Shown here one piece after another: positions 430-47,312 of a stretch of 64,000 nucleotides of DNA (its first letter is position 1; each line of letters starts with the position of its first letter). Made by a program: the position numbers and the translations under genes. The stretch covers positions 1 to 64,000 of the forward strand of contig CDROCS010006015.1 of assembly GCA_977020255.1 (NCBI GenBank). The letters are read 5' to 3'. The notes under the pieces are model-generated. The model saw only the letters and a list, made by a program, of their open reading frames with translations, had not been told where the DNA came from and ran no database searches. Origin of the DNA: Obrimoposthia wandeli. Taxonomy: Eukaryota.

Positions 430-434
430 GCAAC

Positions 435-465: not shown

Positions 466-494
466 CCCCATAATGCAAACAACTACACTTCTTA

Positions 495-510: not shown

Positions 511-569
511 TTGTTTCATGATCACATTTGAGATAATGTGAGTATATATAATATTTTTATTGTCCTATA

Positions 570-598
570 TTTACTATATATATGTTAGCGAGTATAAT
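570..598 (+). promoter_or_regulatory. Sigma70-type promoter of the two-gene moron
   Basis: TTTACT-17bp-TATAAT. Confidence 0.6.
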
Positions 599-647
599 TC
601 GCGGCACATTTTTCATGACAATACGACGCACTGCTAGGAAGGTATAT

Positions 648-833
648 ATGTCTTTTTTCAATCGTAAAAATTCACCTGAAGATGATACTGAACGCCTTCT
701 AAAAATAATGGCGAAGAATCGTGATCGCGTAACTATCAGTGATAGTGGCGTAATTCGCGTCAATCTAAATAACGCGGACGTTAAAAGAAAAATCCGTGAA
801 CAATTCGATAAGTTAAAAGCACTAGAGGTTTAA
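648..833 (+). CDS. Small basic accessory protein, 61 aa (ORF track start 582; RBS favours 648)
   Basis: AGGAAGG RBS at 636-642 before the ATG at 648. Stop is 2 bp before the next gene. Confidence 0.7.
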   Translation: MSFFNRKNSPEDDTERLLKIMAKNRDRVTISDSGVIRVNLNNADVKRKIREQFDKLKALEV

Positions 834-835
834 TA

Positions 836-1654: not shown

Positions 1655-1666
1655 CGCTTCAATCTT

Positions 1667-1701
1667 TTTTATCAGGTCACCAAATTGATGACCTGATAAA
1701 A
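1667..1701. terminator. Bidirectional terminator between the moron and the early operon
   Basis: TTTTATCAGGTCA...TGACCTGATAAAA inverted repeat between convergent genes. Confidence 0.8.
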
Positions 1702-1708
1702 GCCATAT

Positions 1709-2050
1709 TTAATTCTTATTACAAACAAGTAAGTCACCACAACAAAGAGCATAATGATCACTTGATAACTCAGCCAAGATCACCGATTTTTGCCCAACAG
1801 AGTATTCACTTAAATCTTTCTCGAAAACGCCAACTTCAGAATTTTCAACACCAATCTTGATTTCATCCACTACGGCACTAATCGTAAACATATCGAATAC
1901 GGCCATGCATATCGTATCCATTCTTTTCTGCAGTTCTCTTACAATATCGTCTGCCGTTTCTGGTTCGCCTGGGTTACCAAAACCTGAAAAGAAATCGCCA
2001 AATTCTGAATCTACTAAGTTTTTAATTTTCTGTAACATCTTCAACTCCAT
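1709..2050 (-). CDS. Phage hypothetical protein (distal early operon)
   Basis: 113-aa ORF co-oriented with rep and overlapping the upstream ORF. Confidence 0.7.
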   Translation of the reverse strand: MELKMLQKIKNLVDSEFGDFFSGFGNPGEPETADDIVRELQKRMDTICMAVFDMFTISAVVDEIKIGVENSEVGVFEKDLSEYSVGQKSVILAELSSDHYALCCGDLLVCNKN

Positions 2051-2210
2051 TATTAGCTAGGCTATGGCATTTTCTTTTGCCTACAAACTCCCGAAAAGAT
2101 TCGTTTCGTCTACGGTCTATAAAAGCTACAGCAGCTATTACAGAAACAAACAATACTGTGACAAAAATTAGTGCCGACAGAATCCATACATCAACGTGTT
2201 CACATACCAT
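2022..2210 (-). CDS. Small single-TM phage protein
   Basis: Hydrophobic VWILSALIFVTVLFVSVIAAVAFI followed by a basic tail; identical in copy B. Confidence 0.65.
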   Translation of the reverse strand: MVCEHVDVWILSALIFVTVLFVSVIAAVAFIDRRRNESFREFVGKRKCHSLANNGVEDVTEN

Positions 2211-2220
2211 AAGTCACCTA

Positions 2221-2376
2221 TTATTTAAGCAGACGATCTAAGTCTACTAAATTAAATATTTCCCAAGCCTCTTGGAGATATACATCAACGTATCTCCCGA
2301 GCTCACCTTGTTCGAAGCAATACCCCTTCTTCTTTGCTGCATTTTCAAAGGCTGCTCTCCTCTCTTCATAATTCAT
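2221..2376 (-). CDS. 51-aa phage protein not in the ORF track (MNYEERRAAFENAAKKKGYCFEQ...)
   Basis: Open frame translated by hand; GAGGG RBS; fills the gap in the early operon. Confidence 0.6.
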   Translation of the reverse strand: MNYEERRAAFENAAKKKGYCFEQGELGRYVDVYLQEAWEIFNLVDLDRLLK

Positions 2377-2538
2377 CGAAACGCCCTCATTTGGCCAACA
2401 TCGATAATATTAACTATGCTGCATGTGTATATCTCTAACCCCAATCCTACGATTCCCAACCTGGTATGAAATTGGACTTATCTTTAATTTCAGTTTCAGG
2501 ACTGTTCAACTCCATTATTTATTAAGCTGTAATTCGCA

Positions 2539-2718
2539 TTATGCGTTTGAATTAAAACGGTGCTTACTAAGCTCTAGCGTTAATCGAATAAGTGATTTAA
2601 TCACCTCTTCATTATCAGCGTGTTGAGATACGTAAATAAGCATTTCACCATTTTTCTGGAATTTACAAGATAACGCTTGGCCCTCACGTTCCGCTACTGA
2701 CTTTAATTCTTTATGCAT
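2539..2718 (-). CDS. 59-aa phage protein coupled to the rep stop
   Basis: ATGCATAA start/stop overlap with rep; conserved in copy B. Confidence 0.6.
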   Translation of the reverse strand: MHKELKSVAEREGQALSCKFQKNGEMLIYVSQHADNEEVIKSLIRLTLELSKHRFNSNA

Positions 2719-4825: not shown

Positions 4826-5003
4826 ATTGAGCTCTGAACTCTTTGACCGTCATTGTTTTAAGCTGACCCGCTTTAACTTTGATACGCTGCATATAATTAC
4901 GTTTCTTATAGTTTTTACGTTCACTGATCACTTCTAGGCTAGCGCGTAACTTTTTGACATTAGCCAAGCCACGACGTCTTTCTTCAATGGTTAATTTATT
5001 CAT
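4794..5003 (-). CDS. Small basic phage protein overlapping the rep start
   Basis: 69-aa ORF in the early operon. Confidence 0.65.
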   Translation of the reverse strand: MNKLTIEERRRGLANVKKLRASLEVISERKNYKKRNYMQRIKVKAGQLKTMTVKEFRAQYGEDFDVCPD

Positions 5004-5017
5004 AATTTAAATCACCC

Positions 5018-5671
5018 TTAGAACGGTATATCTGGATCAAATGGAAGTAGAGCTTTAGCTGCCACCATGTCTTTATAGCTATCAGTAGCACGTCGTGCTA
5101 ATTCATATCGGCGGAACTGAGAGGGGCGGGTAATCCGTCGTGAATAAAAAATATAATAAACACATGCCTTCATTTTGGGAGTGTGCATATGACGTAAATT
5201 GTCACGCGGATTATCAAAATGAGAAAGCCATTCTGAAAGATGAATATTTTCAAGTAATCTAGCAAGACGTAGAGAACGGTAAAAAAACGCCCATGATTCC
5301 CGTGGTGATATTGCATATTTAGATCTATACATACAGTCCATATGTGCTGCATATATAGCTTTTACCTCTGGTTCAGCTCTTATAGCTTTGGTGTCGCCAT
5401 AAAACTCCATATCTTCAAATTTAAAGAGATAACGACTATTCTTACCATCAAACCCAAAGCAGCTAACAAAATCTTCTAAAAGACATTTAAAATCATTTTC
5501 TGGAATATATTCATAGTGGTTAGCAGCTAGCTTTCGAACTGCTTCGTGCAAATATTCAGTAAGTTCTTCACATGGGTAACCATCAATAATTGAACCTGCA
5601 AACTGATCAAAAATACCAATCATTTCTTGTTCGTTAATTTCATGCCTAACAATCATCGTTAATTTATTCAT
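5018..5671 (-). CDS. Early phage protein ending in an SSB-like acidic tip (PFDPDIPF)
   Basis: 217-aa ORF coupled to its neighbours; C-terminus resembles the DDDIPF tip of SSB. Confidence 0.75.
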   Translation of the reverse strand: MNKLTMIVRHEINEQEMIGIFDQFAGSIIDGYPCEELTEYLHEAVRKLAANHYEYIPENDFKCLLEDFVSCFGFDGKNSRYLFKFEDMEFYGDTKAIRAEPEVKAIYAAHMDCMYRSKYAISPRESWAFFYRSLRLARLLENIHLSEWLSHFDNPRDNLRHMHTPKMKACVYYIFYSRRITRPSQFRRYELARRATDSYKDMVAAKALLPFDPDIPF

Positions 5672-5895
5672 ACCTCTGCGAACTCCTGTATATCTAATAC
5701 GATGTAACCACCCGCATTTTTAAGACTACGAAGTACGCCGCGGTAAAGTTGGCGGCAACCCAATAGATGACACGCATTTTCAACTGCATCGGCTTTACTG
5801 TCGTGATCACCGATTTCAACAGTTTGAGGCTCGTTGGTTTTAGGTTCACGAATTGTGCCGCCACTTGGACAAATCTTTATTGCTACAAATTTCAT
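5668..5895 (-). CDS. Phage hypothetical protein
   Basis: ATGA-type overlaps with both neighbours. Confidence 0.75.
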   Translation of the reverse strand: MKFVAIKICPSGGTIREPKTNEPQTVEIGDHDSKADAVENACHLLGCRQLYRGVLRSLKNAGGYIVLDIQEFAEV

Positions 5896-6209
5896 GCTGC
5901 CACCGCTGTTGAAACTTGCGTTGCCATTAATGCTAATATTTTACTTTTGGCATTAAGCACAGCCTCTAGCGGTGTCTTTTTGTTGTCATCAAGTAAGGAT
6001 GCCTTGCCATCTAACCTAATGTATTTACTGAAAAGCACAGCGTCACTTAAGCCTTGTGTCGTCATCCGTCCAACATTAATATTTGAACGAAGAACATGTA
6101 TAAATATTGAATCGCCAAGGCCGTGATACTCAACTGTGATATCAATTGCATCTGGTCTAGACATTGCAATAAACATAATTTCATTAATAACGCTTTGAAC
6201 TGTATTCAT
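5892..6209 (-). CDS. Phage hypothetical protein
   Basis: Coupled ORF; homolog at 40481-40798 with conservative changes. Confidence 0.75.
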   Translation of the reverse strand: MNTVQSVINEIMFIAMSRPDAIDITVEYHGLGDSIFIHVLRSNINVGRMTTQGLSDAVLFSKYIRLDGKASLLDDNKKTPLEAVLNAKSKILALMATQVSTAVAA

Positions 6210-6475
6210 AATATTTCCTTAGTTAATTCTTCAGACCAAAATTCTTCAAGGTCATTGTTATCAAAAAAACGAACACCTATAAGTGGTTCTTTAGGATAAG
6301 ATTGACCGCAACCACCGTCATATTCGTAATACAAAACTTTTCCTTTACGACCTATATGTTCTTCAGGCATATCATCTTGAACACCAACGACTAACACGAT
6401 GTTATGAATTGCGAACGGCGCTCCATCTATGTTTCTACGTTGCGGTTTTGCACCTAATACCTGTTCTAATGTCAT
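6206..6475 (-). CDS. Phage hypothetical protein
   Basis: Coupled ORF with GGAGG RBS; homolog in copy B. Confidence 0.75.
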   Translation of the reverse strand: MTLEQVLGAKPQRRNIDGAPFAIHNIVLVVGVQDDMPEEHIGRKGKVLYYEYDGGCGQSYPKEPLIGVRFFDNNDLEEFWSEELTKEIL

Positions 6476-6484
6476 TAAACCTCC

Positions 6485-7003
6485 TTACATGCCTGGCATT
6501 GGTATGCCGCTAAGTACCGTATCGGCGAACATAGAAACGAACGGCCCTACACCACCACAACGGTTTTCAACGTCAGATATAAGAAAGACCAATTCACGGA
6601 TTGTTGACTGTGCCTTGGTAACAATTGCGTCTTTTTTATATAGCGTCAGTCTGCTATCAGATTCGGCCTCTATAACGTGATTACAAATATCACCAGCCTG
6701 CCCCGCAACACTCATCGCACTAATTGCTAATGGTTTAGCTCCTGCCGCCTTTGGTAGGCGAACAGCAACGAGCCCAATTTCTAAAATTGCACTATTGATA
6801 ATGTCGTGATTATCAGTGGCCTTGGTTATCTTGATTAACTCATTAACCGTTAATTGGTGGGGCTGGTTCGGGTTCAACTTATTACGGAGCATCTGACCAC
6901 GTATGCCACAGTCATTTGCAATTGACTCTACGTTTTCAATATTCGCAAAACGGATGCAAGCCGCGTCAATTACGCTTTGTTTGCTATCATTAATTTCAAA
7001 CAT
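6485..7003 (-). CDS. cII: 186/K139-type CII regulatory protein
   Basis: GQMLRNKLNPNQPHQLTV motif; position directly after cox. Confidence 0.85.
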   Translation of the reverse strand: MFEINDSKQSVIDAACIRFANIENVESIANDCGIRGQMLRNKLNPNQPHQLTVNELIKITKATDNHDIINSAILEIGLVAVRLPKAAGAKPLAISAMSVAGQAGDICNHVIEAESDSRLTLYKKDAIVTKAQSTIRELVFLISDVENRCGGVGPFVSMFADTVLSGIPMPGM

Positions 7004-7150
7004 TGAACAAATTTCCCTATTTGAGATGATTGAGTTACGCAGTGACGACCGCGTTTAAAAGGCAACCGATAAGAACCAGCTCAATGGCACTAGGCACAAG
7101 CAAACATAATTCTTGTCGGTATTTGTGAATGAAATTGATGAACGGCATGC

Positions 7151-7351
7151 TTAATGTTCCTGCTCATCTGCTTGTTTAAATAGCGCGACCATGTTGATTA
7201 ACACTGTCGCGTTTTTAGAACGCTTAGGCATGATTGGGATCTCGCCGCGTGCAATAAAGGTATCGATCACACGCACAGACATGCCCGTAATAGTCGAATA
7301 GACCTTTCTTGTTACGTACGGTGAGTCTATTTGTAGAACTGTATTAGCCAT
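7151..7351 (-). CDS. cox: Cox/Apl-like repressor-excisionase, 66 aa (true start MANTVLQ)
   Basis: Winged-HTH-like YVTRKVYSTITGMSVRVIDTFIARGEIPI; divergent from cI; copy B ORF starts at the same Met. Confidence 0.8.
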   Translation of the reverse strand: MANTVLQIDSPYVTRKVYSTITGMSVRVIDTFIARGEIPIMPKRSKNATVLINMVALFKQADEQEH

Positions 7352-7445
7352 GTGATTCCCCTTGATAAATAAATGTTTAATAAAGCCAGTAACGCCAATG
7401 ATTTTGCCTGCCATTACTGATATTCTTATCGGTTGACTAAATGCG

Positions 7446-7530
7446 GTTAAATGCAACCATTTAACTGATATCAGTATTATTGATCACATATCTAAACACG
7501 TCAATGAATATGTTTAGATATCTGATCACA
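7446..7530. promoter_or_regulatory. cI/cox switch operator region
   Basis: Inverted repeats GTTAAATG-N4-CATTTAAC (7446-7465), ACTGATATCAGT (7464-7475) and ATATCTAAACA-N12-TGTTTAGATAT (7488-7521) flanked by TGATCA. Confidence 0.6.
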
Positions 7531-7551
7531 AAATAGATGGGTGATTAGGAT

Positions 7552-8517
7552 ATGAAACAGTTCTCGGAGTGTGAAACACAAGATTTCCCACATAGATTAA
7601 AAGAAATAATTGGTAATGAATCTATAAGGAAATTCTCAGTACGCTGCGGATTGAGTCCAGCGACAATATCAAACTATGTAAATGGTCAGCATGGTCCATC
7701 TTTAGAAAATATTGAGATCATAGCCAGAGTGGCAAATGTTGACATTGCGTGGCTTGCAACCGGAATTACTGCTCAGAATAATGATCACCCTTTAATGTCT
7801 AAAAATACAAATTCACAGAATGTGCACACTGATTTCGGGGAGCGTCTAAAAGAAGTGATAGGCACAACTTCGATTAAATCTTTTTCAACAGAGTCAGGGT
7901 TAGGTACAACAACTCTTCAGAGTTATATGAAAGGAGCTAGTTATCCAACCCTAGATAGATTGAATTTAATTGCTGCAACCGCAAAAGTAGATATAAATTG
8001 GTTGCTCACTGGTGGCGGTGATGTAAATACCGAACACTCTAATGCCTCGAAATACATAAAGATCCCACACTTTGATGTTCAAGCCTCAGCGGGCACAGGT
8101 TCTGAACTGGTCGAAAGCGGCATAAGCAAGAATACAGTGGACATACATCCACAAACCTTATTAGACCAGGGCTTGAATCCTGAAGGCTTATTGTCTATGT
8201 ACGTGAAGGGTGATTCGATGGAACCGTCTTTGTTTGATGGGGATATGATTTTAGTAAAGAAGATGATCAGTCCGTTTAGCATTCTTGAAGGCGTGTATAT
8301 CTTTCGCGTGTTTAACGAGATATTCATTAAGCGTATACAATTCAACAAATACAGTGCGAAGCTAAAAGTTGATAGTGACAATCCCTTTTATGATTCATAC
8401 ACCATTACAGGCAATGACCTTAACGATGTTGAAATTATCGGTGAAGTGATCTGTACTATTTTCAGTAAGGTCAGACGAATAGTTCGACCAACCGATGAGT
8501 CAGTAGCGGTAAATTAG
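7552..8517 (+). CDS. cI: Immunity repressor with two tandem XRE HTH domains and an S24 autopeptidase
   Basis: Two RLKE.IG...GL...T...Y..G...P.L.....IA....VD..WL.TG repeats; ASAG cleavage site; GDSMEP serine; IKR lysine. Confidence 0.9.
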   Translation: MKQFSECETQDFPHRLKEIIGNESIRKFSVRCGLSPATISNYVNGQHGPSLENIEIIARVANVDIAWLATGITAQNNDHPLMSKNTNSQNVHTDFGERLKEVIGTTSIKSFSTESGLGTTTLQSYMKGASYPTLDRLNLIAATAKVDINWLLTGGGDVNTEHSNASKYIKIPHFDVQASAGTGSELVESGISKNTVDIHPQTLLDQGLNPEGLLSMYVKGDSMEPSLFDGDMILVKKMISPFSILEGVYIFRVFNEIFIKRIQFNKYSAKLKVDSDNPFYDSYTITGNDLNDVEIIGEVICTIFSKVRRIVRPTDESVAVN

Positions 8518-8546
8518 GTAATGCGGGATTTAGTAAGGCTTAATTA

Positions 8547-8603
8547 GTCCCTGAATATTTTAAAATTATCGGTGAAGTTATTTGGTCTGGGCAGAGAATG
8601 TAA
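8547..8603 (+). pseudogene. Relic 3' end of a former S24 repressor gene (VPEYFKIIGEVIWSGQRM*)
   Basis: Shares AAATTATCGGTGAAGT with cI (8432-8447 vs 8563-8578). Copy B reads VPEDFEIIGEVIWSGQRM*. Confidence 0.6.
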
Positions 8604-8631
8604 GCAGCTGTTGTCAGCAGCTGCTTACATT
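8597..8631. terminator. Hairpin between the convergent cI and DUF4041-like genes
   Basis: AATGTAAGCAGCTG-N7-CAGCTGCTTACATT, 14-bp stem; compensatory change in copy B. Confidence 0.7.
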
Positions 8632-8633
8632 AG

Positions 8634-10265
8634 TTAAGAAGCCATGGCTACTTCATTTTGTTTCGTAATAGCCAAAGACTCTCTATATTCAGCGGCGTCC
8701 GCTTTCATGGTCCAATGCACCTCTTCAATACCTTGCTGGTCAACTGCTTGTTTGATTGCAGCGAGTGACACATTGAAGAATTCTTTTCTGAAGTTAATCT
8801 TGTTCACTGAGTCTAACTTGAATTTTTCATGCAACTTTTTTTCCAACTTAGGTGCATCTTCGCTGTAAAGCATTGCGTGAACATCAAATGAAAATGGCAC
8901 TGAAGCATCACCAAGTTCTTTTACCCTGTCCATAGGCTCTAATCGGCGAGTCATGCCAATTTTAAAGACTTCTTCACCAAAGCTACCAATATTACTAATC
9001 ACGTAAACATGACCACGACGCGTTTGCTGAGCCATAGACATTGCACGCACACCTCGTTCGCTAGCTTCAGCAAGTTTACCTTCTAATTCAGCTAGCTTAG
9101 CCTCAAACTCTAAGCGTTGATCATCATTAGCACCAGCCAACTCCGCACGTGCTGTTTCAAGTGTTTTTTGGATAAGTGCTTCTTCTTTTTGAGCTGCTTT
9201 AATCGCTTTATCCATTTCTCGTTGGGCTTTTTCTTCCTCACGAATTTGCTGTTTAATTTCTCTCTGCTCTTCAAGCTCTATTTGGCGAAGCTCATAAGTA
9301 GCAACAGCCCATTTCAATTCATCAAGTCGAGCATCTAAGAAATCTTGATTAATACGTGCATCTCTAAATGATTTACCATTGTGATTAACAAGAGCAAAAG
9401 CATCTATTATTTCTTGTTTTATTTTGCCGTAATTATCAACTTTTACTTTCGCTAATGCAGAATCTACCTTGCCATTAAAAGCATCTACAACAAAGTGCTC
9501 TGCATACAGTTTTCTTTGTTTTTCAACATAATCACAAGTACCGGCCATGCTTTGCTTAACCAGTAATTTAACTAAAGCCCTAGTCTTCTTAAGCTCTGCG
9601 CCAGCTTCTTTATGGCTAAATTCATCAGCCAAATCATCAAGAACGGAATGATTCGGAATGATATAATCATCTCGATAACCTTCAATGGTATTTTTCATTG
9701 CTTTAATAGCTTTAGCATACGTATCCGCTTTTTCTTTTGCTTCATAAGCATCACCAGCAATTTCTTGTGCTTGTGTTTTAGCGGAAGTAACCACCCTATC
9801 GGCTTCAGTTCGAGCGCTTTCAATTATGGTTAATGCTTTTTCATTTGCGCCATTAATCTTCAAATTTGCTTTAGCCGTTAGCTCTTTAGCTGCTGTTTTA
9901 TCTGCACTAATTTCACTATAGGCTTCATATTTTTCAGTGCTTATCTTTCGTTCCGCATCATTGATTTTATTTCTTAACTTATCTTCTTCAGCATTGATGT
10001 ATGTTTTTGACTTAGCGATATCTTGCTGTATCCCTAAATTAGACTTTTCAATTTCCTGCTTAATATGTTCTTCTATATCAATAATATTCCCATACTTACC
10101 TGTTAGCATTTCAACTTCAGATTTGTATTTTTCTAACTCAACTTCTGTATCATCAATAATTTTATTCAACTTTCTCTTTGCCATTCGCCCAGTAATAAAT
10201 AATATTATTGGTAATAGGATCAAACAAGAAATAAATATAATCGCACCCAATGCACCGTCTTCCAT
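8634..10265 (-). CDS. Membrane-anchored coiled-coil protein with DUF4041 and T5orf172/GIY-YIG-like C-terminal domain
   Basis: N-terminal TM; long heptad region; GHVYVISNIGSFG...FKIGMTRR...RV.EL..ASVPF.FDVH motif. Confidence 0.85.
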   Translation of the reverse strand: MEDGALGAIIFISCLILLPIILFITGRMAKRKLNKIIDDTEVELEKYKSEVEMLTGKYGNIIDIEEHIKQEIEKSNLGIQQDIAKSKTYINAEEDKLRNKINDAERKISTEKYEAYSEISADKTAAKELTAKANLKINGANEKALTIIESARTEADRVVTSAKTQAQEIAGDAYEAKEKADTYAKAIKAMKNTIEGYRDDYIIPNHSVLDDLADEFSHKEAGAELKKTRALVKLLVKQSMAGTCDYVEKQRKLYAEHFVVDAFNGKVDSALAKVKVDNYGKIKQEIIDAFALVNHNGKSFRDARINQDFLDARLDELKWAVATYELRQIELEEQREIKQQIREEEKAQREMDKAIKAAQKEEALIQKTLETARAELAGANDDQRLEFEAKLAELEGKLAEASERGVRAMSMAQQTRRGHVYVISNIGSFGEEVFKIGMTRRLEPMDRVKELGDASVPFSFDVHAMLYSEDAPKLEKKLHEKFKLDSVNKINFRKEFFNVSLAAIKQAVDQQGIEEVHWTMKADAAEYRESLAITKQNEVAMAS

Positions 10266-10336
10266 AGCAACCTTCTAAAATTAAAATGTAAAAATATAAC
10301 TGCAAGTAGTATTACTTCAAACAGCAGTTTCGTAAT

Positions 10337-10597
10337 CTATAAACCCTTCCACGTAACGTAAGTTTTATTTGCAAAGAAAAGAGTGAACACAGTTAGCACG
10401 ACAGGCATTAGCCAGCGAACGAGCAATAGTGGTGCTATCGCTTCGGCTACATACCCTGAAGGACTAGCACTTAAACACCAGTTAATTGACAACATAGTAA
10501 GCACTGCCATCACCAGTGTAATAATGAGACCTACAGGCCAAAACCATCCCGTTACTTCATAAAGCTGTTCTATGATCTGTTCTTTTTTTCTCGCCAT
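10337..10597 (-). CDS. Small 2-TM membrane protein
   Basis: Two hydrophobic segments; identical in both copies. Confidence 0.7.
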   Translation of the reverse strand: MARKKEQIIEQLYEVTGWFWPVGLIITLVMAVLTMLSINWCLSASPSGYVAEAIAPLLLVRWLMPVVLTVFTLFFANKTYVTWKGL

Positions 10598-10707
10598 TTA
10601 ATATCCTTATGGGATAGCTATTTGTGGTTAGGGTATAACTATACCCAGATTTATAGCGTTGATTAGTGACATTAATTACATAATGAGGGAATTTTTTGAG
10701 TAGGTAT

Positions 10708-10730
10708 AAAAAAGCCTCCGTGTGGAGGCT
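10708..10730 (-). terminator. Terminator of the GHKL-STAS-TM operon
   Basis: AGCCTCC-gtgt-GGAGGCT with an A6 tract on the plus strand (U tail on minus). Confidence 0.75.
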
Positions 10731-10758
10731 CTGACTTATGAATTAGACGGCTAATTAC

Positions 10759-11232
10759 CTACTGAATAACCCACAAAACTATTTCTATTAATGCATACAT
10801 ACTTAAAGCAGAACAAAAAACACCAGCTAATGTATATCTATTTATATAAAAAATAGCATATTTACTTTGTACTTTTTCATGAAAGCAAGTGTCTATGTGT
10901 TCAACAGCATCGTAGCATCGGTTTGTTAAATCCGTCTGAGAACTCTCTACATCAAATGTAAAAATAGCACTTATAGGTTTACTTTTAACTGAAACAATCT
11001 CCGTATCAACAAGTGAGTTAAACTCTTTTATCTTATTCTCAATACGAGCAAATTTATGTGAAAATGTTGTTTCCTTTACTAAGGTCCCAACATCCTCTTT
11101 ATACTCTTTAATTAAGCTATATATCTCATCAATAATGGCTTCTTTTGTATTATATAATGCCGTTCTTTTTAAAGTATTTATATGAATGAATACTGCCAAC
11201 AGCCAACTCATAGCATAAATTGCGTAGCTCAT
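10759..11232 (-). CDS. 2-TM protein with a helical soluble middle; putative effector
   Basis: Hydrophobic N- and C-terminal segments; TAATG overlap with the STAS gene stop. Confidence 0.75.
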   Translation of the reverse strand: MSYAIYAMSWLLAVFIHINTLKRTALYNTKEAIIDEIYSLIKEYKEDVGTLVKETTFSHKFARIENKIKEFNSLVDTEIVSVKSKPISAIFTFDVESSQTDLTNRCYDAVEHIDTCFHEKVQSKYAIFYINRYTLAGVFCSALSMYALIEIVLWVIQ

Positions 11233-11582
11233 TACAGCCTCGCAAGTCGATCAGCTTCAGCCTCTCTGATACGCTCATCAATAATAGTAATTACAGATGT
11301 TAAGTGATCATGTTTATAAATAAGTTTTTCATCCAATTCAGCTTTAATGAATCCAGATTTCCTAATCAATGCTCCAAACCCTTCATCAAGGAACGAGCGA
11401 CCGTAACGATTATATCCAGTTAAATCTACAGTCACCTGGTCATATTCACGTAAATCAACAGCTAGCATGTCCTCTCGAAATGTTTGCCCTGAAGTCTCAG
11501 GACAAGTAGTGCAGTCATCTCTGTATCTGCCATATGGCTTCGCATGAAAATCTTCAACAAGCAAAATTGTTTTATTATTCAC
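11232..11582 (-). CDS. Stand-alone STAS-like (DUF4325-type) protein
   Basis: PYGRY...SGQTFRE...VTVDLTG...GRSFLDEGFG.L motif; GTG start 1 bp after the kinase stop. Confidence 0.8.
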   Translation of the reverse strand: MNNKTILLVEDFHAKPYGRYRDDCTTCPETSGQTFREDMLAVDLREYDQVTVDLTGYNRYGRSFLDEGFGALIRKSGFIKAELDEKLIYKHDHLTSVITIIDERIREAEADRLARL

Positions 11583-11583
11583 T

Positions 11584-12699
11584 TTAAATACTCCACTGAA
11601 TCAATGTTCCTTGAATTTTATATTCTGGATTAGATAGATTACTTTCATTATCGCTCTGTTCATTAGTATAACGATAAAAGCCGTAATTACTAAACATAAG
11701 CAAAAAGCTTCGTTCATCTCCTTCTGATATCAAAGCCTTAATACTCTTACTACCTTGCCCATGACCTGCAACGTCGGTTGATGTTGTATTTTTATGCATT
11801 GCAGCACGAATGAATTGGCCATCGCTTAAACTTTTTCGTAACACTTTAACTTTAACTAATTCAGCCCATTTTTTGAAAACTGAATCATCACGAATTGAAT
11901 CTTTAATGCTTCCATTAAACGCATCTGGATAAAGTGCGTTAATTCTAGAAAGAATAACTTCGTTGTTCTCTGATAGTGAATCAGGAATGCCGACACCAGC
12001 ATCATAAATGACAATAAAAAGGTTATCCCCTAATCTATCACAACAAAACCACCACTTTTTATTTTCGTGTAATTCTTCATCAGGATACGCATGTCGTCCT
12101 ACATTATCAAAAGTTTCGGTTATTGCAGAGCTTATTTGCTGCTCTTTTTCTGCTGACGCCCCTGGGAAGTAGGAATCTAAGATGTAATCAACGATTAGTT
12201 CCTTCAATTCTGAAACTCGAGCATTATCGCCCATGATGACCGGTAGTGTGGTCGTATCTTTAATGCTAGTTTCTCTTTTTTCTGCCGTGAGGAATAGCCC
12301 TGAACCTTTAATAGTACCGTTGACTTCTTTTGACTTTTTAGACCAGATAATACCAATTTTAGTGTTCACATTATGAATATTTCGAACCTGATCAATGATT
12401 GAATATATGACAAGAACAGGCATCGCTTTTAATATTTTGGTTTGACTAAATGATATGTAAATCGATTCTGGATTTCTCGCTAGCGCAGCTTTTAATTTTT
12501 CAAAGAATTCATAGCATGAAAAATTTTCTCCCTGCATTAAATCAACACAAGTTGGAGCATCCACAATTTCAGCACCAAAAAGCTGTTTGTTTTTCTCTTT
12601 TATTCGTGTTTGATAATTTAATGAACTAGCTTCTCTTTTTTGCTCTCTTAACTTTATTAAATTACGCTTTCTAGAATTTAACTGTTCAAACTTTCTCAT
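11584..12699 (-). CDS. GHKL (HATPase_c-like) ATPase/kinase with an N-terminal STAS-like region
   Basis: N box TETFDNVGRHAY, G1 YDAGVGIP, G2 GHGQG, terminal GTLIQW; no HisKA helix seen. Confidence 0.8.
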   Translation of the reverse strand: MRKFEQLNSRKRNLIKLREQKREASSLNYQTRIKEKNKQLFGAEIVDAPTCVDLMQGENFSCYEFFEKLKAALARNPESIYISFSQTKILKAMPVLVIYSIIDQVRNIHNVNTKIGIIWSKKSKEVNGTIKGSGLFLTAEKRETSIKDTTTLPVIMGDNARVSELKELIVDYILDSYFPGASAEKEQQISSAITETFDNVGRHAYPDEELHENKKWWFCCDRLGDNLFIVIYDAGVGIPDSLSENNEVILSRINALYPDAFNGSIKDSIRDDSVFKKWAELVKVKVLRKSLSDGQFIRAAMHKNTTSTDVAGHGQGSKSIKALISEGDERSFLLMFSNYGFYRYTNEQSDNESNLSNPEYKIQGTLIQWSI

Positions 12700-12981
12700 T
12701 AAAAATTTCCAATATTGATAGTTTATCTAGAATAAATGGAGCGATAAAAATTAATTAAAGCATTTGATATAAATCTAATTGATAGTTAATAACGTCCATT
12801 GTTATAAGTGATCTAGTATATCAACAATTTAACACGGTTCAATGCAATTCGGTGCAGCTCAATCATCCTGTAGTGTATAGAAAGTTTTATTTAGGTGGGA
12901 GGCATTCTCACACAGCTTGTAAAGACCCATGTTTATTCACTTGCGATCAAACATAGCTTACTTTGATAACATGCATTATAA

Positions 12982-12997
12982 CTGTATATAAAAACAG
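12982..12997. promoter_or_regulatory. LexA (SOS) box upstream of the integrase
   Basis: CTGTATATAAAAACAG, 11 bp before TATAAT (13009-13014). Conserved at 47595-47610. Confidence 0.85.
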
Positions 12998-13053
12998 TGC
13001 TTGTGACTTATAATCTCAGACACATCTTTTTTACACGTTATAGGAACCCCTTC

Positions 13054-14112
13054 ATGTCTGTTCGCAATCTCAAAGATGGCAACAAAAAACCTTGGCTATG
13101 CGAATGTTATCCCAACGGCACCGCTGGTCGTCGTATTCGGAAACGCTTTGCCACAAAAAGTGAGGCAACGGCTTTTGAGCATCACACAATAAAAGAAACC
13201 GAAAAGAAACCATGGTTGGGAACAAAAAAAGATAAACGGCATTTACTTGAATTGATAGACTTGTGGCACAAGCTACACGGCAAAAACTTAAAAAGTGGGG
13301 ACCAATCCTATAACAGACTGCAAGTCATCTGTGAGCAGCTAAATAACCCCGTTGCCGCTGAGTTAACAGCTAATGATTACGTTCATTACCGTGCAACGCG
13401 CTTATCTGTTCGTAATAGCGAAGAGTCATTAGCGAAATCAACTCATAATTATGAGATCACAATATTGAATACCGTCTTCAATGAGCTGATTAAGATGGAT
13501 GAATGGAAACTACCAAACCCGTTTATCAAGCTAAAGAAGTTTAAACTTGAAGAAAAGCCACCTTCTTTTTTAAATGACAAACAAATAGATTTCTTGTTAG
13601 AAGAGATCAATCCAACCCCGCTCGATGTCGATATTGACCGGGTAATTAAAATTTGTTTATCAACCGGTAGTCGAGTGATGGAAGCCGTGAATTTAAATGT
13701 AACTCAATTATCAAAATACAAGATCACTTTTACCAACACAAAAGGCAAACGCAACAGAACGGTACCTATATCAAAAGATCTATACGACGAAATACACAGT
13801 GATGTTGCGGGTCAATTATTTTCATGCACTTATAATGACATTAGGGATAGGATAAGAAGTAGCATAGATGAATTGCCAAAAGGACAGGCCACCCACATAT
13901 TACGGCATACATTCGCAAGTCATTTTATGATGAATGGCGGTAATATCTTAGTATTACAACAGATTTTAGGCCATACTAATATTAAGCAGACAATGGCATA
14001 TTCTCATTTTGCACCGTCACATTTAAATGACGCTATATTGCTTAACCCTCTTGATATGAGGAGAAAAAGTGGCGGCCAGCAAATTCAATCGCCACTTAAT
14101 CGCCACAAATAA
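13054..14112 (+). CDS. int: Tyrosine integrase, HP1/186 type (352 aa from the ATG at 13054)
   Basis: STGSR, HILRHTFASHFMMNGGNI and LGH...T..Y catalytic motifs. Confidence 0.95.
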   Translation: MSVRNLKDGNKKPWLCECYPNGTAGRRIRKRFATKSEATAFEHHTIKETEKKPWLGTKKDKRHLLELIDLWHKLHGKNLKSGDQSYNRLQVICEQLNNPVAAELTANDYVHYRATRLSVRNSEESLAKSTHNYEITILNTVFNELIKMDEWKLPNPFIKLKKFKLEEKPPSFLNDKQIDFLLEEINPTPLDVDIDRVIKICLSTGSRVMEAVNLNVTQLSKYKITFTNTKGKRNRTVPISKDLYDEIHSDVAGQLFSCTYNDIRDRIRSSIDELPKGQATHILRHTFASHFMMNGGNILVLQQILGHTNIKQTMAYSHFAPSHLNDAILLNPLDMRRKSGGQQIQSPLNRHK

Positions 14113-14318
14113 AACAATTAAATGTAAGTAATTGATTTAAAAGGCGTTAACTCGTAAGTAATTCATAGGTAAAATATTACCTATTCTTTAGCCCATTAAT
14201 GGTAACTCATTGAAAAACAACTAAATCATTGTTTTTCAATGTTTATTAAATTATCCTCTCTACGCATATAGCCACATTTAGCCGTGTATAGTCACCAGTT
14301 GACCGCCACTTAATCGCC
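14090..14318. repeat. attP-like junction: arm repeats, IHF site and core
   Basis: CGCCACTTAATCGCC at 14090-14104 and 14304-14318 flanks the palindromic core ATAGGTAA-AATA-TTACCTAT (14165-14184). IHF consensus match AATCAATTACTTA on the minus strand at 14125-14137. Confidence 0.8.
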
Positions 14319-35014: not shown

Positions 35015-35019
35015 GCAAC

Positions 35020-45373: not shown

Positions 45374-45847
45374 CTACTGAATAACCCACAAAACTATTTC
45401 TATTAATGCATACATACTTAAAGCAGAACAAAAAACACCAGCTAATGTATATCTATTTATATAAAAAATAGCATATTTACTTTGTACTTTTTCATGAAAG
45501 CAAGTGTCTATGTGTTCAACAGCATCGTAGCATCGGTTTGTTAAATCCGTCTGAGAACTCTCTACATCAAATGTAAAAATAGCACTTATAGGTTTACTTT
45601 TAACTGAAACAATCTCCGTATCAACAAGTGAGTTAAACTCTTTTATCTTATTCTCAATACGAGCAAATTTATGTGAAAATGTTGTTTCCTTTACTAAGGT
45701 CCCCAACATCCTCTTTATACTCTTTAATTAAGCTATATATCTCATCAATAATGGCTTCTTTTGTATTATATAATGCCGTTCTTTTTAAAGTATTTATATG
45801 AATGAATACTGCCAACAGCCAACTCATAGCATAAGTGCGTAGCTCAT
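45374..45847 (-). pseudogene. 2-TM effector-like gene (copy B), frameshifted
   Basis: Extra C in a C-run near 45700 and a deletion near the start. Confidence 0.65.
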
Positions 45848-46197
45848 TACAGCCTCGCAAGTCGATCAGCTTCAGCCTCTCTGATACGCTCATCAATAAT
45901 AGTAATTACAGATGTTAAGTGATCATGTTTATAAATAAGTTTTTCATCCAATTCAGCTTTAATGAATCCAGATTTCCTAATCAATGCTCCAAACCCTTCA
46001 TCAAGGAACGAGCGACCGTAACGATTATATCCAGTTAAATCTACAGTCACCTGGTCATATTCACGTAAATCAACAGCTAGCATGTCCTCTCGAAATGTTT
46101 GCCCTGAAGTCTCAGGACAAGTAGTGCAGTCATCTCTGTATCTGCCATATGGCTTCGCATGAAAATCTTCAACAAGCAAAATTGTTTTATTATTCAC
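45847..46197 (-). CDS. STAS-like protein (copy B)
   Basis: Identical to 11232-11582. Confidence 0.8.
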   Translation of the reverse strand: MNNKTILLVEDFHAKPYGRYRDDCTTCPETSGQTFREDMLAVDLREYDQVTVDLTGYNRYGRSFLDEGFGALIRKSGFIKAELDEKLIYKHDHLTSVITIIDERIREAEADRLARL

Positions 46198-46198: not shown

Positions 46199-47312
46199 TT
46201 AAATACTCCACTGAATCAATGTTCCTTGAATTTTATATTCTGGATTAGATAGATTACTTTCATTATCGCTCTGTTCATTAGTATAACGATAAAAGCCGTA
46301 ATTACTAAACATAAGCAAAAAGCTTCGTTCATCTCCTTCTGATATCAAAGCCTTAATACTCTTACTACCTTGCCCATGACCTGCAACGTCGGTTGATGTT
46401 GTATTTTTATGCATTGCAGCACGAATGAATTGGCCATCGCTTAAACTTTTTCGTAACACTTTAACTTTAACTAATTCAGCCCATTTTTTGAAAACTGAAT
46501 CATCACGAATTGAATCTTTAATGCTTCCATTAAACGCATCTGGATAAAGTGCGTTAATTCTAGAAAGAATAACTTCGTTGTTCTCTGATAGTGAATCAGG
46601 AATGCCGACACCAGCATCATAAATGACAATAAAAAGGTTATCCCCTAATCTATCACAACAAAACCACCACTTTTTATTTTCGTGTAATTCTTCATCAGGA
46701 TACGCATGTCGTCCTACATTATCAAAAAGTTTCGGTTATTGCAGAGCTTATTTGCTCTTTTTCTGCTGACGCCCCTGGGAAGTAGGAATCTAAGATGTAA
46801 TCAACGATTAGTTCCTTCAATTCTGAAACTCGAGCATTATCGCCCATGATGACCGGTAGTGTGGTCGTATCTTTAATGCTAGTTTCTCTTTTTTCTGCCG
46901 TGAGGAATAGCCCTGAACCTTTAATAGTACCGTTGACTTCTTTTGACTTTTTAGACCAGATAATACCAATTTTAGTGTTCACATTATGAATATTTCGAAC
47001 CTGATCAATGATTGAATATATGACAAGAACAGGCATCGCTTTTAATATTTTGGTTTGACTAAATGATATGTAAATCGATTCTGGATTTCTCGCTAGCGCA
47101 GCTTTTAATTTTTCAAAGAATTCATAGCATGAAAAATTTTCTCCCTGCATTAAATCAACACAAGTTGGAGCATCCACAATTTCAGCACCAAAACGCTGTT
47201 TGTTTTTCTCTTTTATTCGTGTTTGATAATTTAATGAACTAGCTTCTCTTTTTTGCTCTCTTAACTTTATTAAATTACGCTTTCTAGAATTTAACTGTTC
47301 AAACTTTCTCAT
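46199..47312 (-). pseudogene. GHKL kinase/ATPase (copy B), frameshifted near 46725-46755
   Basis: Extra A in ATCAAAAAG and a 3-bp loss versus copy A. Confidence 0.7.

What the first reader, a model, noticed from the sequence alone, without database searches (positions are those of the whole stretch)
10708..12699. STAS-GHKL kinase / STAS / 2TM three-gene operon: candidate partner-switching anti-phage system
Seen: three AT-rich, translationally coupled genes (TAA-a-GTG and TAATG junctions) with their own terminator, divergent from int, in the cI-int accessory interval. The 371-aa protein has GHKL boxes (ETFDNVGRHAY, DAGVGIP, GHGQG) without a HisKA helix, plus an N-terminal STAS-like segment. 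The 116-aa protein is a lone STAS with a Ser in GRSFLDEGFG. The 157-aa protein has two TM helices. Known: GHKL Ser kinase plus STAS pairs (RsbW/RsbV, SpoIIAB/AA) work as partner switches, and P2-like prophages carry defence operons in accessory slots. Inference: no sigma factor is present, so the switch may gate the 2TM protein as a membrane-disrupting effector, triggered when a phage protein is sensed. It may equal an already catalogued three-gene system such as Rst_3HP; I cannot check that here.
Basis: partly seen in the sequence, partly recalled or inferred. Interest (0 to 1): 0.82.

Follow-up and report, generated by a model that had tools for sequence, protein, structure and literature searches.

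The report
Kinase–STAS–membrane protein prophage defence cassette
A three-gene cassette in a prophage (a STAS-plus-GHKL kinase, a small STAS-like protein with an invariant serine, and a membrane-anchored helical protein) is real, widespread in phage and satellite defence hotspots, and looks like a membrane-effector version of the VapKSC kinase-controlled toxin–antitoxin defence system described in 2026; nobody has tested it.

Summary
Three tightly coupled minus-strand genes (A 371 aa, B 116 aa, C 157 aa) end in a strong terminator. They lie between cI and int of a P2-like prophage, next to a PD-Lambda-1 gene.

- **A:** a basic N-terminal helix, a STAS-like α/β domain and a GHKL domain whose N, G1, G2 and G3 boxes are invariant in 25 homologues.
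- **B:** Pfam DUF4325 ("STAS-like"), with Ser63 invariant.
- **C:** all-helical, with a weak N-terminal and a strong C-terminal hydrophobic helix and no known fold.

The A–B–C order recurs in all 33 non-redundant loci examined whose contig reached the third gene. These include P2-like prophages, an E. coli P4-like satellite at the int–psu hotspot, lambdoid prophages, plasmids and a temperate phage.

It is not Rst_3HP and has no PADLOC v2 match. Rousset et al. 2022 listed it as an untested hotspot cassette ("HATPase_c | DUF4325").

The closest characterised system is VapKSC (Chambers et al. 2026), which has a STAS–GHKL kinase, a 116-aa STAS antitoxin with a phospho-serine, and a PIN toxin. Here a membrane protein replaces the PIN toxin.

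Best reading: the kinase phosphorylates B, and B then releases a membrane effector. This mechanism is inferred, not shown. I rate it a new variant of a known kind, interest about 0.6.

The parts
11584..12699 (-). Gene A (371 aa). It has a basic N-terminal helix (residues ~2-34), a STAS-like α/β domain (~43-158) and a GHKL (Bergerat-fold) ATPase/kinase domain (~183-371) with a long insert between the G1 and G2 boxes.
   Evidence: ORF. AlphaFold2 model with pLDDT 81.8 and pTM 0.81. Foldseek against PDB finds CheA P4, SpoIIAB (1tid_C, TMt 0.72, prob 1.00) and SiaB. The N, G1, G2 and G3 boxes are invariant in 25 homologues. phrog_3364 matches at 4e-44. The N-terminal 40 residues carry a median net charge of +9.
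11232..11582 (-). Gene B (116 aa). It is a DUF4325 'STAS-like' protein with an invariant Y60-G61-x-S63-F64-x-x-E67 motif and a C-terminal helix. Ser63 is the candidate phospho-acceptor.
   Evidence: Pfam PF14213 at 7e-12, above the gathering score. Invariant columns. The top PDB sequence hit for two of three family profiles is 9z7o_A VapS (E 0.02 and 0.26). In both, Ser63 aligns with chain residue S66, which is native S48.
10759..11232 (-). Gene C (157 aa). It is an all-helical protein with an N-terminal hydrophobic helix (2-21), a central ~110-residue helical domain predicted to be cytoplasmic (basic residues follow helix 1), and a C-terminal TM helix (134-157). It is the candidate effector.
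   Evidence: ORF. Hydropathy. AlphaFold2 model with pLDDT 81.5 and five helices. No PDB fold match (best E 0.25). No Pfam, NCBIfam or PADLOC family. Homologues follow B in every locus examined.
10708..10732 (-). Intrinsic terminator of the three-gene operon: a 9-bp stem, a 4-nt loop and a U run.
   Evidence: Sequence. RNA fold with z-score -4.96.
12700..12996 (.). Divergent intergenic region between A and int. It contains one sigma-70-like site on the minus strand (12842-12815, TTGAAC-16-TATACT with TG). This is a candidate promoter only.
   Evidence: The number of promoter-like sites is not above the shuffled expectation, so this is a consensus match and not evidence of function.
8634..10265 (-). 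Neighbouring known defence gene: PD-Lambda-1 (DUF4041/SNIPE plus a T5orf172 GIY-YIG-type domain, with an N-terminal TM helix). It is not part of the trio, but it shows that this interval is a defence slot.
   Evidence: PADLOC PDLC03976 at 3.8e-117. Pfam DUF4041, T5orf172 and MUG113. The same kind of gene lies directly upstream of A in V. aestuarianus.
12997..14112 (+). Prophage tyrosine integrase, divergent from the operon. The similarity between the two prophage copies ends about 78 nt downstream of its stop codon.
   Evidence: Pfam Int_N and Phage_integrase. Copy boundary.
7552..8517 (+). cI-like repressor (two HTH domains plus Peptidase_S24). It bounds the accessory interval on the other side.
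46199..47312 (-). Second copy of gene A, in the tandem second prophage. It is broken. Relative to the first copy it has 1 substitution, 1 frameshifting single-base indel and 1 in-frame 3-base indel.
   Evidence: Only counts and outer bounds are given.
45847..46197 (-). Second copy of gene B. It is intact and identical in nucleotide sequence to the first copy.
45374..45847 (-). Second copy of gene C. It is broken. Relative to the first copy it has 1 substitution and 2 frameshifting single-base indels.
   Evidence: Only counts and outer bounds are given.

Best explanation
The cassette is a prophage-borne, kinase-gated defence (abortive-infection-type) module built on the same logic as VapKSC.

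**Proposed mechanism.**
1. In the resting lysogen, the small STAS-like protein B binds the cytoplasmic helical domain of the membrane protein C and keeps it inactive.
2. An infection-associated signal activates the STAS-GHKL protein A. By analogy with CapK/VapK this is most likely single-stranded DNA, bound between A's STAS-like and GHKL domains, perhaps with help from A's strongly basic N-terminal helix.
3. A transfers phosphate from ATP to the invariant Ser63 of B.
4. Phospho-B lets go of C.
5. Free C disturbs the inner membrane, through oligomerisation and loss of membrane potential, and so stops the infected cell from producing phage.
6. No phosphatase gene is present, so the switch would act one way.

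**Shown here.**
- The three genes, their coupling and their terminator.
- The GHKL fold and its invariant catalytic boxes.
- DUF4325 membership of B and its invariant Ser.
- The membrane-anchored helical nature of C.
- The strict A-B-C order across many taxa and mobile elements.
- The location in known defence hotspots.

**Inferred.** Kinase activity, Ser63 as the acceptor, B-C binding, toxicity of C, the trigger and protection against phage.
For: **Architecture equals VapKSC except for the third gene.**
- VapK is STAS plus GHKL. VapS is a 116-aa STAS protein with a short C-terminal helix and an invariant phospho-Ser48. The third gene is the toxin. That system gave about 2 log protection, which was lost in kinase-site, Ser and toxin mutants (PMC13373217).
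- A has the same STAS-like plus GHKL layout and invariant N/G1/G2/G3 boxes.
- B is 116 aa and a DUF4325 protein. Ser63 is invariant in 48 close and 17 diverse homologues.
- VapS (9z7o_A) is the top PDB sequence hit of two B-family profiles. In both, Ser63 aligns with the VapS phospho-serine.
- An independent survey recorded a VapC subgroup (PIN.4) as transcriptionally coupled to DUF4325 genes (PMC5499597). DUF4325 proteins therefore do sit beside toxins.

**Gene order is strict.**
- A-B-C recurs in 17 of 17 species-representative genomes, spanning Vibrio, Aliivibrio, Shewanella, Pseudomonas, Edwardsiella, Yersinia and Hafnia.
- It recurs in all other full-length contexts looked up.
- The junctions overlap or lie within 5 nt in 12 of 13 other loci.

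**Defence-hotspot context.**
- P2-like cI-int interval, here and in Aliivibrio logei.
- E. coli P4-like satellite between int and psu.
- Beside integrases of other prophages.
- A V. parahaemolyticus satellite-like element.
- A plasmid, beside MazEF and an antirestriction gene.
- Adjacent to PD-Lambda-1, here and in V. aestuarianus.
- Listed among P4 and P2 hotspot cassettes by Rousset 2022.

**C topology.** C has a membrane anchor, and the basic residues after helix 1 place its central domain in the cytoplasm, where B could reach it.
Against: - No experiment bears on this cassette.
- The Pfam HATPase matches of A are all below the curated threshold. GHKL domains can be ATPases rather than kinases.
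- The sequence link from B to VapS is weak (E 0.02 and 0.26). It disappears with a narrower 48-sequence profile.
- A could not be compared directly with VapK, because no reference to that sequence was available.
- The N-terminal domain of A shows no sequence similarity to B or to STAS profiles in the window protein.
- C matches no known pore-former or effector.
- The N-terminal helix of C is only marginally hydrophobic here. Enterobacterales relatives of C lack the C-terminal TM helix, so a two-helix pore cannot be the general mechanism.
- The third protein of Marinobacter phage AS1 is not detectably related to C.
- The trigger is taken entirely from analogy.
Confidence: 0.55

Rival explanations
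1. Classical partner switch with the kinase as the inhibitor (RsbW/SpoIIAB logic). A itself binds and holds C, or another target. Unphosphorylated B competes for A and frees the target. Phosphorylation of B resets the system.
For: Foldseek relates the GHKL domain of A to the anti-sigma kinase SpoIIAB and to SiaB of the SiaB-SiaC switch. NCBIfam gives a faint RsbW match (E 0.06). The pairing of a GHKL protein with a STAS-like protein is the hallmark of such switches (established knowledge of RsbW/RsbV and SpoIIAB/SpoIIAA).
Against: There is no sigma factor and no PP2C phosphatase gene in or beside the cassette, in this window or in any fetched locus. A carries its own STAS-like domain, as CapK and VapK do, and in those systems the STAS protein, not the kinase, holds the target.
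Confidence: 0.12
2. The cassette is mainly an addiction or stabilisation module, or a superinfection-exclusion module, of mobile elements. C acts at the membrane, for example by blocking DNA entry or killing cells that lose the element. It is not an infection-triggered abortive defence.
For: The cassette is always on or beside mobile elements: prophages, satellites and plasmids. In phage AS1 it lies just downstream of the gene divergent from cro. In the plasmid it neighbours MazEF. In the second prophage copy, A and C are broken while B is intact. This is what one might expect if B neutralises C, although three frameshifts missing B is not significant (about 0.55 by length alone).
Against: An ATP-dependent sensor kinase with invariant catalytic boxes is more than a simple addiction pair needs. 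The cassette also occurs with no mobile-element genes called within about 6 kb in V. aestuarianus and in the hut-operon neighbourhood of L008/L009. The related VapKSC protects against phage. The two roles do not exclude each other.
Confidence: 0.15
3. A is an ATPase that does not phosphorylate B (a chaperone-, MORC- or GyrB-like use of the GHKL fold). B is a nucleotide- or ligand-binding STAS adaptor. The three proteins form a membrane-tethered ATP-driven complex of some other function.
For: The Pfam HATPase hits are sub-threshold. The long insert between G1 and G2 (residues ~240-312) is atypical for anti-sigma kinases. Foldseek also returns Hsp90-type N-domains, though with low probability.
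Against: The best fold matches are kinases: CheA P4, SpoIIAB and SiaB. The invariant Ser of B sits, in the profile alignment, exactly where VapS is phosphorylated. No transducer or second domain typical of GHKL ATPases follows the ATP-binding domain.
Confidence: 0.1
4. A and B are a CapK/CapS-type transcriptional controller of the adjacent PD-Lambda-1 gene, and C is an accessory protein.
For: CapK/CapS pairs sit next to immune operons. PD-Lambda-1 is adjacent here and in V. aestuarianus.
Against: B is 116 aa and has no winged-helix domain, which is what makes CapS a repressor. A strong terminator and an 86-aa ORF separate the trio from PD-Lambda-1. tblastn with the PD-Lambda-1 protein found a relative beside the trio only in V. 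aestuarianus (L006, L007, L028) among all fetched loci. In V. aestuarianus the PD-Lambda-1 gene lies upstream, not downstream.
Confidence: 0.03

Closest known systems
VapKSC (VapK kinase / VapS STAS antitoxin / VapC PIN toxin), Chambers et al., EMBO J 2026 (PMC13373217; PDB 9Z7O)
   Same: Both are three-gene operons in the same order. The first protein is a STAS plus GHKL kinase without a HisKA helix. The second is a 116-aa STAS-type protein with an invariant Ser and a C-terminal helix. The third gene is the presumed effector. Neither has a phosphatase or a sigma factor. Both are found near other defence genes. VapS is the top PDB sequence hit for two B-family profiles, with the serines aligned.
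   Different: The third protein here is a membrane-anchored all-helical protein, not a PIN nuclease. A has an extra basic N-terminal helix. The sequence similarity of B to VapS is marginal. A was not compared directly with VapK. No function has been tested for this cassette. The VapKSC paper does not mention a transmembrane variant (the word occurs 0 times).
CapK/CapS transcriptional controllers of immune operons (same paper)
   Same: Both have a STAS plus GHKL kinase that acts on a STAS protein through a conserved serine, and both are associated with defence loci.
   Different: CapK has an N-terminal HTH, whereas A has a basic helix instead. CapS carries a winged-helix DNA-binding domain, which B lacks. 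CapKS lies upstream of an operon that it regulates, whereas this cassette has its own third gene and terminator.
RsbW/RsbV and SpoIIAB/SpoIIAA anti-sigma partner switches; SiaB/SiaC
   Same: All pair a GHKL-fold Ser kinase with a STAS-fold substrate. The fold matches to SpoIIAB and SiaB support this.
   Different: Here there is no sigma factor and no PP2C phosphatase. The kinase is twice as long and carries its own STAS-like domain. B belongs to DUF4325 rather than Pfam STAS (PF01740). The cassette lies on mobile elements.
'HATPase_c | DUF4325' cassette in the P4 and P2 hotspot catalogues of Rousset et al. 2022 (PMC9122126, Tables S1 and S5)
   Same: It is the same cassette. The E. coli proteins WP_016234813, WP_016234814 and WP_016234815 listed there are the trio found in the P4-like satellite of E. 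coli PSS-16.
   Different: That work catalogued it (9 occurrences at the P4 hotspot). It does not appear in the table of systems evaluated for defence (0 mentions), and it received no name, mechanism or link to kinase/STAS switches.
Rst_3HP (the 'HP + HP + HP' system of Rousset et al. 2022)
   Same: It is also a three-gene system of a P2-like prophage hotspot.
   Different: Its proteins give only weak HHpred matches (Cap4_SAVED 83%, Ish1 87%), with no HATPase or DUF4325. B matches DUF4325 at 7e-12. The two are different systems.

Membership tests
VapKSC | The first gene encodes a STAS domain followed by a GHKL kinase domain with a conserved active-site Asn. | tested here: met
   The AlphaFold2 topology and the Foldseek hits to CheA P4, SpoIIAB and SiaB support this. 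N199 and the other boxes are invariant. Direct homology to VapK was not tested, because no reference to its sequence was available.
VapKSC | [quoted passage not shown] | tested here: met
   B is 116 aa and matches DUF4325. Ser63 is invariant. It aligns with the VapS phospho-serine in weak profile hits (E 0.02 and 0.26). The hit is lost with a narrower profile.
VapKSC | The third gene encodes a VapC-like PIN-domain nuclease. | tested here: not met
   C has no Pfam, NCBIfam or PADLOC family. Its model is all-helical with terminal hydrophobic helices and has no PDB match. No third protein was annotated as, or scanned as, PIN in any locus examined.
VapKSC | [quoted passage not shown] | not testable with these tools
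   This needs biochemical or structural data.
CapK/CapS | CapS has a STAS domain followed by a winged-helix DNA-binding domain. | tested here: not met
   B is 116 aa. Only DUF4325 is matched (residues 31-91), followed by a single helix.
CapK/CapS | CapK has an N-terminal HTH before the STAS and GHKL domains. | tested here: not met
   The model of A has one long basic helix (residues 2-34) before the STAS-like domain, and no HTH family is matched.
Anti-sigma partner switch (RsbW/RsbV, SpoIIAB/SpoIIAA) | A sigma factor is the target, and a PP2C phosphatase usually resets the switch. | tested here: not met
   No sigma or PP2C gene lies in or beside the cassette, in this window or in the fetched loci.
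Anti-sigma partner switch (RsbW/RsbV, SpoIIAB/SpoIIAA) | The antagonist belongs to Pfam STAS (PF01740). | tested here: not met
   B matches PF14213 (DUF4325) only. A canonical STAS chain (3t6o_A) appears only at E 1.1.
Rst_3HP | Three hotspot proteins without recognisable domains (HHpred in Rousset 2022 Table S3 shows only weak SAVED and Ish1 matches). | tested here: not met
   This is an indirect test. B has a clear DUF4325 match and A has GHKL boxes, and neither appears in the published HHpred table for HP+HP+HP. No Rst_3HP sequence or model could be compared directly.
Any system or candidate in PADLOC-DB v2.0.0 | A match to a PADLOC profile. | tested here: not met
   A and B have no hit at E <= 1. 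C has only a chance-level PtuB hit (E 0.007, 14 bits). The neighbouring 543-aa protein is PD-Lambda-1.
Pfam DUF4325 (STAS-like) | A score above the gathering threshold of PF14213. | tested here: met
   B scores 45.3 bits against a threshold of 23. All 120 listed B homologues carry PF14213.

The most novel reading that the evidence does not exclude
The kinase-STAS pair (CapK/VapK-type sensor plus a DUF4325 substrate) is a general, portable trigger module. Its commonest partner is not the PIN toxin through which it was discovered. Instead it is a previously unrecognised family of membrane-anchored helical effectors. The A-B-C trio would then be a large, unnamed defence family, with about 1,500 clusters at 50% identity matching the A profile at E <= 1e-10. 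It would occupy P2, P4, lambdoid and satellite hotspots across Gammaproteobacteria and convert a DNA-damage or ssDNA signal into membrane failure.
Probability: 0.4. Interest if true: 0.72.

Novelty: new variant of a known kind. Interest (0 to 1): 0.6.

Why it matters
If the reading is right, three things follow.

- **A portable switch.** A phosphorylation switch that was characterised only in 2026 (a STAS-GHKL kinase acting on a STAS antitoxin) would not be tied to one toxin. It could be plugged into different effectors, here a membrane protein.
- **A large unnamed family.** The A-profile search found 2,535 cluster representatives at E <= 0.001. A cassette that has sat unnamed in the published P2 and P4 hotspot catalogues since 2022 would gain a name and a testable mechanism.
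- **A new effector family.** It would add a membrane-effector family with no known fold relatives.

For genome annotation, the practical gain is that [quoted passage not shown] trios next to integrases can be flagged as a candidate defence system. Current PADLOC v2 models miss them.

Tried and rejected
**Dead ends**
- DNA similarity of the cassette to the phage collection gave no match.
- Single-sequence searches of A, B and C against PDB sequences gave nothing meaningful.
- The A-family profile against PDB sequences returned only a chance-level PhoQ fragment.
- The 48-sequence B profile lost the VapS hit. I therefore treat the B-VapS sequence link as weak.
- hhalign of A's N-terminal domain and of its GHKL domain against the B family gave no signal. 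The "two STAS domains" idea thus rests on the predicted fold and on one sub-threshold Pfam STAS hit in a homologue.
- Foldseek of the C model against PDB returned only generic helical bundles.
- Foldseek of the A model against viral structures returned one unnamed 233-aa protein (E 2.4e-6) and otherwise weak GHKL hits.
- I tried to find a relative of A that is followed by a PIN gene, which would tie A to VapK. I looked up increasingly distant profile hits (P0222, P0300, P0284, P0320). All that had enough contig showed DUF4325 plus a non-PIN protein beginning with a TM helix.

- Direct comparison with VapK, VapS or CapK sequences was not done. They exist only as text in a supplement and have no reference usable in the tools.

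**Ideas rejected**
- Identity with Rst_3HP.
- A CapKS-type regulator of PD-Lambda-1, because B has no DNA-binding domain.
- A sigma-factor switch, because there is no sigma gene.

- I stopped, entered it in no tool and based no conclusion on it. The serine equivalence rests only.


Full report
**1. What is in the sequence**

Three ORFs lie head to tail on the minus strand: A 12699..11584 (371 aa), B 11582..11232 (116 aa, GTG start) and C 11232..10759 (157 aa).
- The junctions are TAA-a-GTG and TAATG, each preceded by a Shine-Dalgarno-like GGAG or GAGG.
- Twenty-six bases after the stop codon of C there is a 9-bp GC-rich hairpin with a U run (10708-10732). It folds far better than shuffled sequence, with z = -4.96.
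- GC content is 0.33-0.35 here, lower than in most of the surrounding prophage.
- The operon diverges from a tyrosine integrase (12997-14112, +). It shares the interval up to a cI-like HTH/S24 repressor (7552-8517, +) with two further minus-strand genes. One is an 86-aa protein with two hydrophobic helices. The other is a 543-aa protein that matches PD-Lambda-1 at 4e-117.
- The surrounding element is a temperate myovirus with P2-type early genes: a GpA-like nickase and a CII/CP76-like activator. It also has sheath, tape-measure, baseplate and terminase genes.
- The closest relative of A (98% identity) is from Moritella viscosa.

**2. The three proteins**

*Protein A.*
- Pfam gives only sub-threshold HATPase matches (E 0.009), but 20 of 25 homologues repeat them.
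- The Bergerat-fold boxes are invariant in an alignment whose members are 31-59% identical to the window protein: E195-x3-N199, D233-x-G235-x-G237, H313-G314-x-G316 and G364-T365.
- An AlphaFold2 model (pLDDT 81.8, pTM 0.81) shows three parts. These are a long helix (2-34), an α/β domain of alternating strands and helices (43-158, pLDDT >90) and the GHKL domain (183-371), which has a long helical insert between G1 and G2.
- Foldseek against the PDB returns CheA P4, the anti-sigma kinase SpoIIAB (TM-score 0.65-0.72 on the target, probability 1.00) and SiaB.
- The N-terminal α/β domain has a STAS-like topology. A Providencia homologue gives a near-threshold Pfam STAS hit (E 3e-4). The window protein's own sequence gives no such signal.
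- The first 40 residues are strongly basic throughout the family, with a median net charge of +9.

*Protein B.*
- B matches Pfam DUF4325, annotated "STAS-like", well above threshold.
- B is the most conserved of the three. It keeps 50-66% identity as far as Pseudomonas, Providencia and Proteus.
- Y60, G61, S63, F64 and E67 are invariant, even when the distant phage and plasmid versions are included.

*Protein C.*
- C matches no family.
- Its model (pLDDT 81.5) is five helices and has no structural relative in the PDB.
- The C-terminal helix (134-157) is clearly membrane-spanning. The N-terminal one is marginal in this copy but is a full TM helix in homologues.
- Basic residues follow the first helix, so by the positive-inside rule the central domain should face the cytoplasm. 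This is an inference.

**3. Conservation of the trio**

*Family sizes.*
- The word-based search found 40 relatives of A, all marine Gammaproteobacteria.
- An exhaustive profile search found 2,535 cluster representatives at E <= 0.001 and 1,491 at E <= 1e-10. Almost all are 330-390 aa long.

*Gene order.*
- Every context I could read shows the same order: A, then a DUF4325 gene, then a 140-225-aa protein that begins with a hydrophobic helix.
- This holds in 17 of 17 species-representative genomes: Vibrio, Aliivibrio fischeri ES114, Shewanella, Pseudomonas, Edwardsiella anguillarum, Yersinia ruckeri and Hafnia paralvei. There, HMMs of B and C score 1e-35 to 1e-61 and 3e-7 to 2e-79 respectively.
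- It also holds in all the individually fetched loci. In one of them the B gene had simply not been called.
- The junctions overlap or lie within 5 nt in 12 of 13 other loci.
- The third protein diverges fastest. The Pseudomonas version is still recognisably related (hhalign 90%). The Providencia one is borderline. The one in Marinobacter phage AS1 is not detectably related beyond the N-terminal helix.
- Enterobacterales versions lack the C-terminal TM helix.

*Contexts of the trio.*

| Host or element | Position |
|---|---|
| Aliivibrio logei P2-like prophage | between cI and int |
| Pseudoalteromonas, V. cholerae and E. coli EC416 prophages | next to the integrase |
| V. parahaemolyticus element with AlpA, VapE-primase and int | satellite-like element |
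| Providencia lambdoid prophage | between lysis genes and terminase |
| Temperate phage AS1 | just downstream of the gene divergent from cro |
| Two Vibrio plasmids | one beside MazEF and an antirestriction gene |
| E. coli PSS-16 P4-like satellite | exactly between int and psu |

- The int-psu interval is the P4 defence hotspot of Rousset et al. 2022.
- Their supplementary tables list these very proteins (WP_016234813, WP_016234814, WP_016234815) and a cassette type "HATPase_c | DUF4325" with 9 occurrences at the P4 hotspot. DUF4325 loci also appear at the P2 hotspot. The cassette is absent from their table of tested systems.
- A Francisella prophage paper shows the same layout between cI and int: a 293-aa hypothetical protein, a 112-aa DUF4325 protein and a 125-aa TM protein.

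**4. Comparison with what is known**

- PADLOC v2 has no model for A, B or C.
The published HHpred table for "HP + HP + HP" shows only weak SAVED and Ish1 matches.
- The closest characterised system was published in 2026 (PMC13373217).
  - The related VapKSC operon encodes VapK (STAS-GHKL), VapS (a 116-aa STAS protein with a C-terminal helix and phospho-Ser48) and the PIN toxin VapC. VapS inhibits VapC until it is phosphorylated.
  - VapKSC gave about 2 log protection against one phage.
- The cassette here has the same first two components in the same order, with no phosphatase and no sigma factor. Its third protein is a membrane-anchored helical protein instead of a PIN domain.
- Two of three B-family profiles rank VapS (9z7o_A) first among 177,635 PDB sequences (E 0.02 and 0.26), in the same register. 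Ser63 aligns with chain residue 66. This is native Ser48 once the 18 extra residues of the crystallised chain are subtracted (134 against 116 aa).
- These E-values are not significant on their own, and a narrower profile loses the hit.
- An earlier survey noted a VapC subgroup coupled to DUF4325 genes. This fits VapS being a DUF4325-type protein.
- I could not compare A with VapK directly.
- The cassette therefore works like VapKSC on present evidence, but it is not a member in the strict sense. The defining PIN toxin was tested for and is absent.

**5. Mechanism**

- The best-supported model has four steps. B holds the cytoplasmic domain of C. A senses an infection-linked signal, by analogy ssDNA, and phosphorylates Ser63. 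Phospho-B dissociates. C then damages the membrane.
- Only the anatomy, the conservation and the context are shown. Every biochemical step is inferred.
- The rivals are as follows:
  - an RsbW-style switch in which the kinase is the inhibitor;
  - a stabilisation or exclusion role for the mobile element;
  - a non-kinase ATPase;
  - a CapKS-type regulator of PD-Lambda-1. This last is largely excluded, because B has no DNA-binding domain and a terminator separates the genes.

**6. Other observations**

- The window contains two tandem, diverged copies of the prophage. Positions 1-14190 match 34586-48804 at 96.4%. Identity in 1-kb bins ranges from 91% to 99.7%, and the trio region is the most alike.
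- The second copy of the trio has an identical B. Its A is broken by 1 frameshifting single-base indel, and it also carries 1 in-frame 3-base indel and 1 substitution. Its C is broken by 2 frameshifting single-base indels and carries 1 substitution.
- Eighteen of the 40 single-base indels between the two copies lie in homopolymer runs of four or more. Read errors therefore cannot be excluded.

**7. Verdict**

It gains an experimental precedent, loses the Rst_3HP equation, and has an unsupported trigger.
- Novelty: a new variant of a known kind. The cassette was already catalogued, but it has not been named or tested.
- Declared slip: while reasoning I recalled a short motif of a Bacillus STAS protein from memory.

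Noticed in passing
window 1-14190 and 34586-48804: There are two tandem, diverged copies of the same ~34.6-kb P2-like prophage. They are 96.4% identical over 14.2 kb, with 1-kb bins ranging from 91% to 99.7%. A complete copy spans about 14191-48804. Similarity ends about 78 nt after each int stop codon, which is probably the att boundary. The mosaic identity argues for two related phages, or an old duplication, rather than an assembly artefact.
   Followed up: partly
window 45374-47312 (-): The second copy of the trio has an identical B. Its A is broken by 1 frameshifting single-base indel, and also carries 1 in-frame 3-base indel and 1 substitution. Its C is broken by 2 frameshifting single-base indels and carries 1 substitution. 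The breaks could be real decay, with the putative neutraliser retained, or homopolymer read errors.
   Followed up: partly
window 8634-10265 (-) and 43249-44880 (-); L006/L007/L028 about 4400-5980: A PD-Lambda-1 (SNIPE/DUF4041 plus T5orf172) gene lies beside the trio in both prophage copies. The two copies differ by 78 substitutions and no indel. A 63%-identical PD-Lambda-1 gene lies 19 nt upstream of A in Vibrio aestuarianus. I could not tell whether the two systems travel together more often than chance.
   Followed up: partly
window 10337-10597 (-): An 86-aa ORF with two strong hydrophobic helices lies between the trio's terminator and PD-Lambda-1. It is identical in both prophage copies. 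It has no relative in any fetched locus and no family match.
   Followed up: partly
L038 3792-5704 (E. coli PSS-16, NZ_AP027713.1): The same trio sits in an E. coli P4-like satellite between int and psu, which is the published P4 defence hotspot. Ten of 5,426 complete E. coli genomes carry a B gene similar at the DNA level.
   Followed up: yes
L036 2845-4771 (Marinobacter phage AS1, genes AS1_41 to AS1_39); Francisella phage KIRK Fhv_0046 to Fhv_0048 (PMC7924643): Temperate phages outside the Vibrio/Enterobacterales range carry an A-like gene, a DUF4325 gene and a small protein with an N-terminal hydrophobic helix that is not detectably related to C. This suggests that the third gene is exchangeable.
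   Followed up: partly
phrog_5816 (profile positions 342-437 of 441), seen with window 11232-11582: B matches only the C-terminal quarter of a 441-position PHROG profile. This hints that some phages encode a fusion of a larger protein, possibly A-like, with the DUF4325 domain.
   Followed up: no
window 11584-12699, residues 214-220 and 1-40 of A: An invariant K-x-W-W-x-x-C motif follows the N box. The N-terminal helix is very basic (net charge +6 to +9 or more in all homologues). Both are absent from ordinary anti-sigma kinases, and both are candidate nucleic-acid contacts.
   Followed up: no
L025, L029, L030 (Edwardsiella, Yersinia ruckeri, Hafnia); L012 (Providencia): In Enterobacterales the C relatives keep the N-terminal TM helix and the conserved motif after it, but they lack the C-terminal TM helix. 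The effector may therefore not need two membrane spans.
   Followed up: partly
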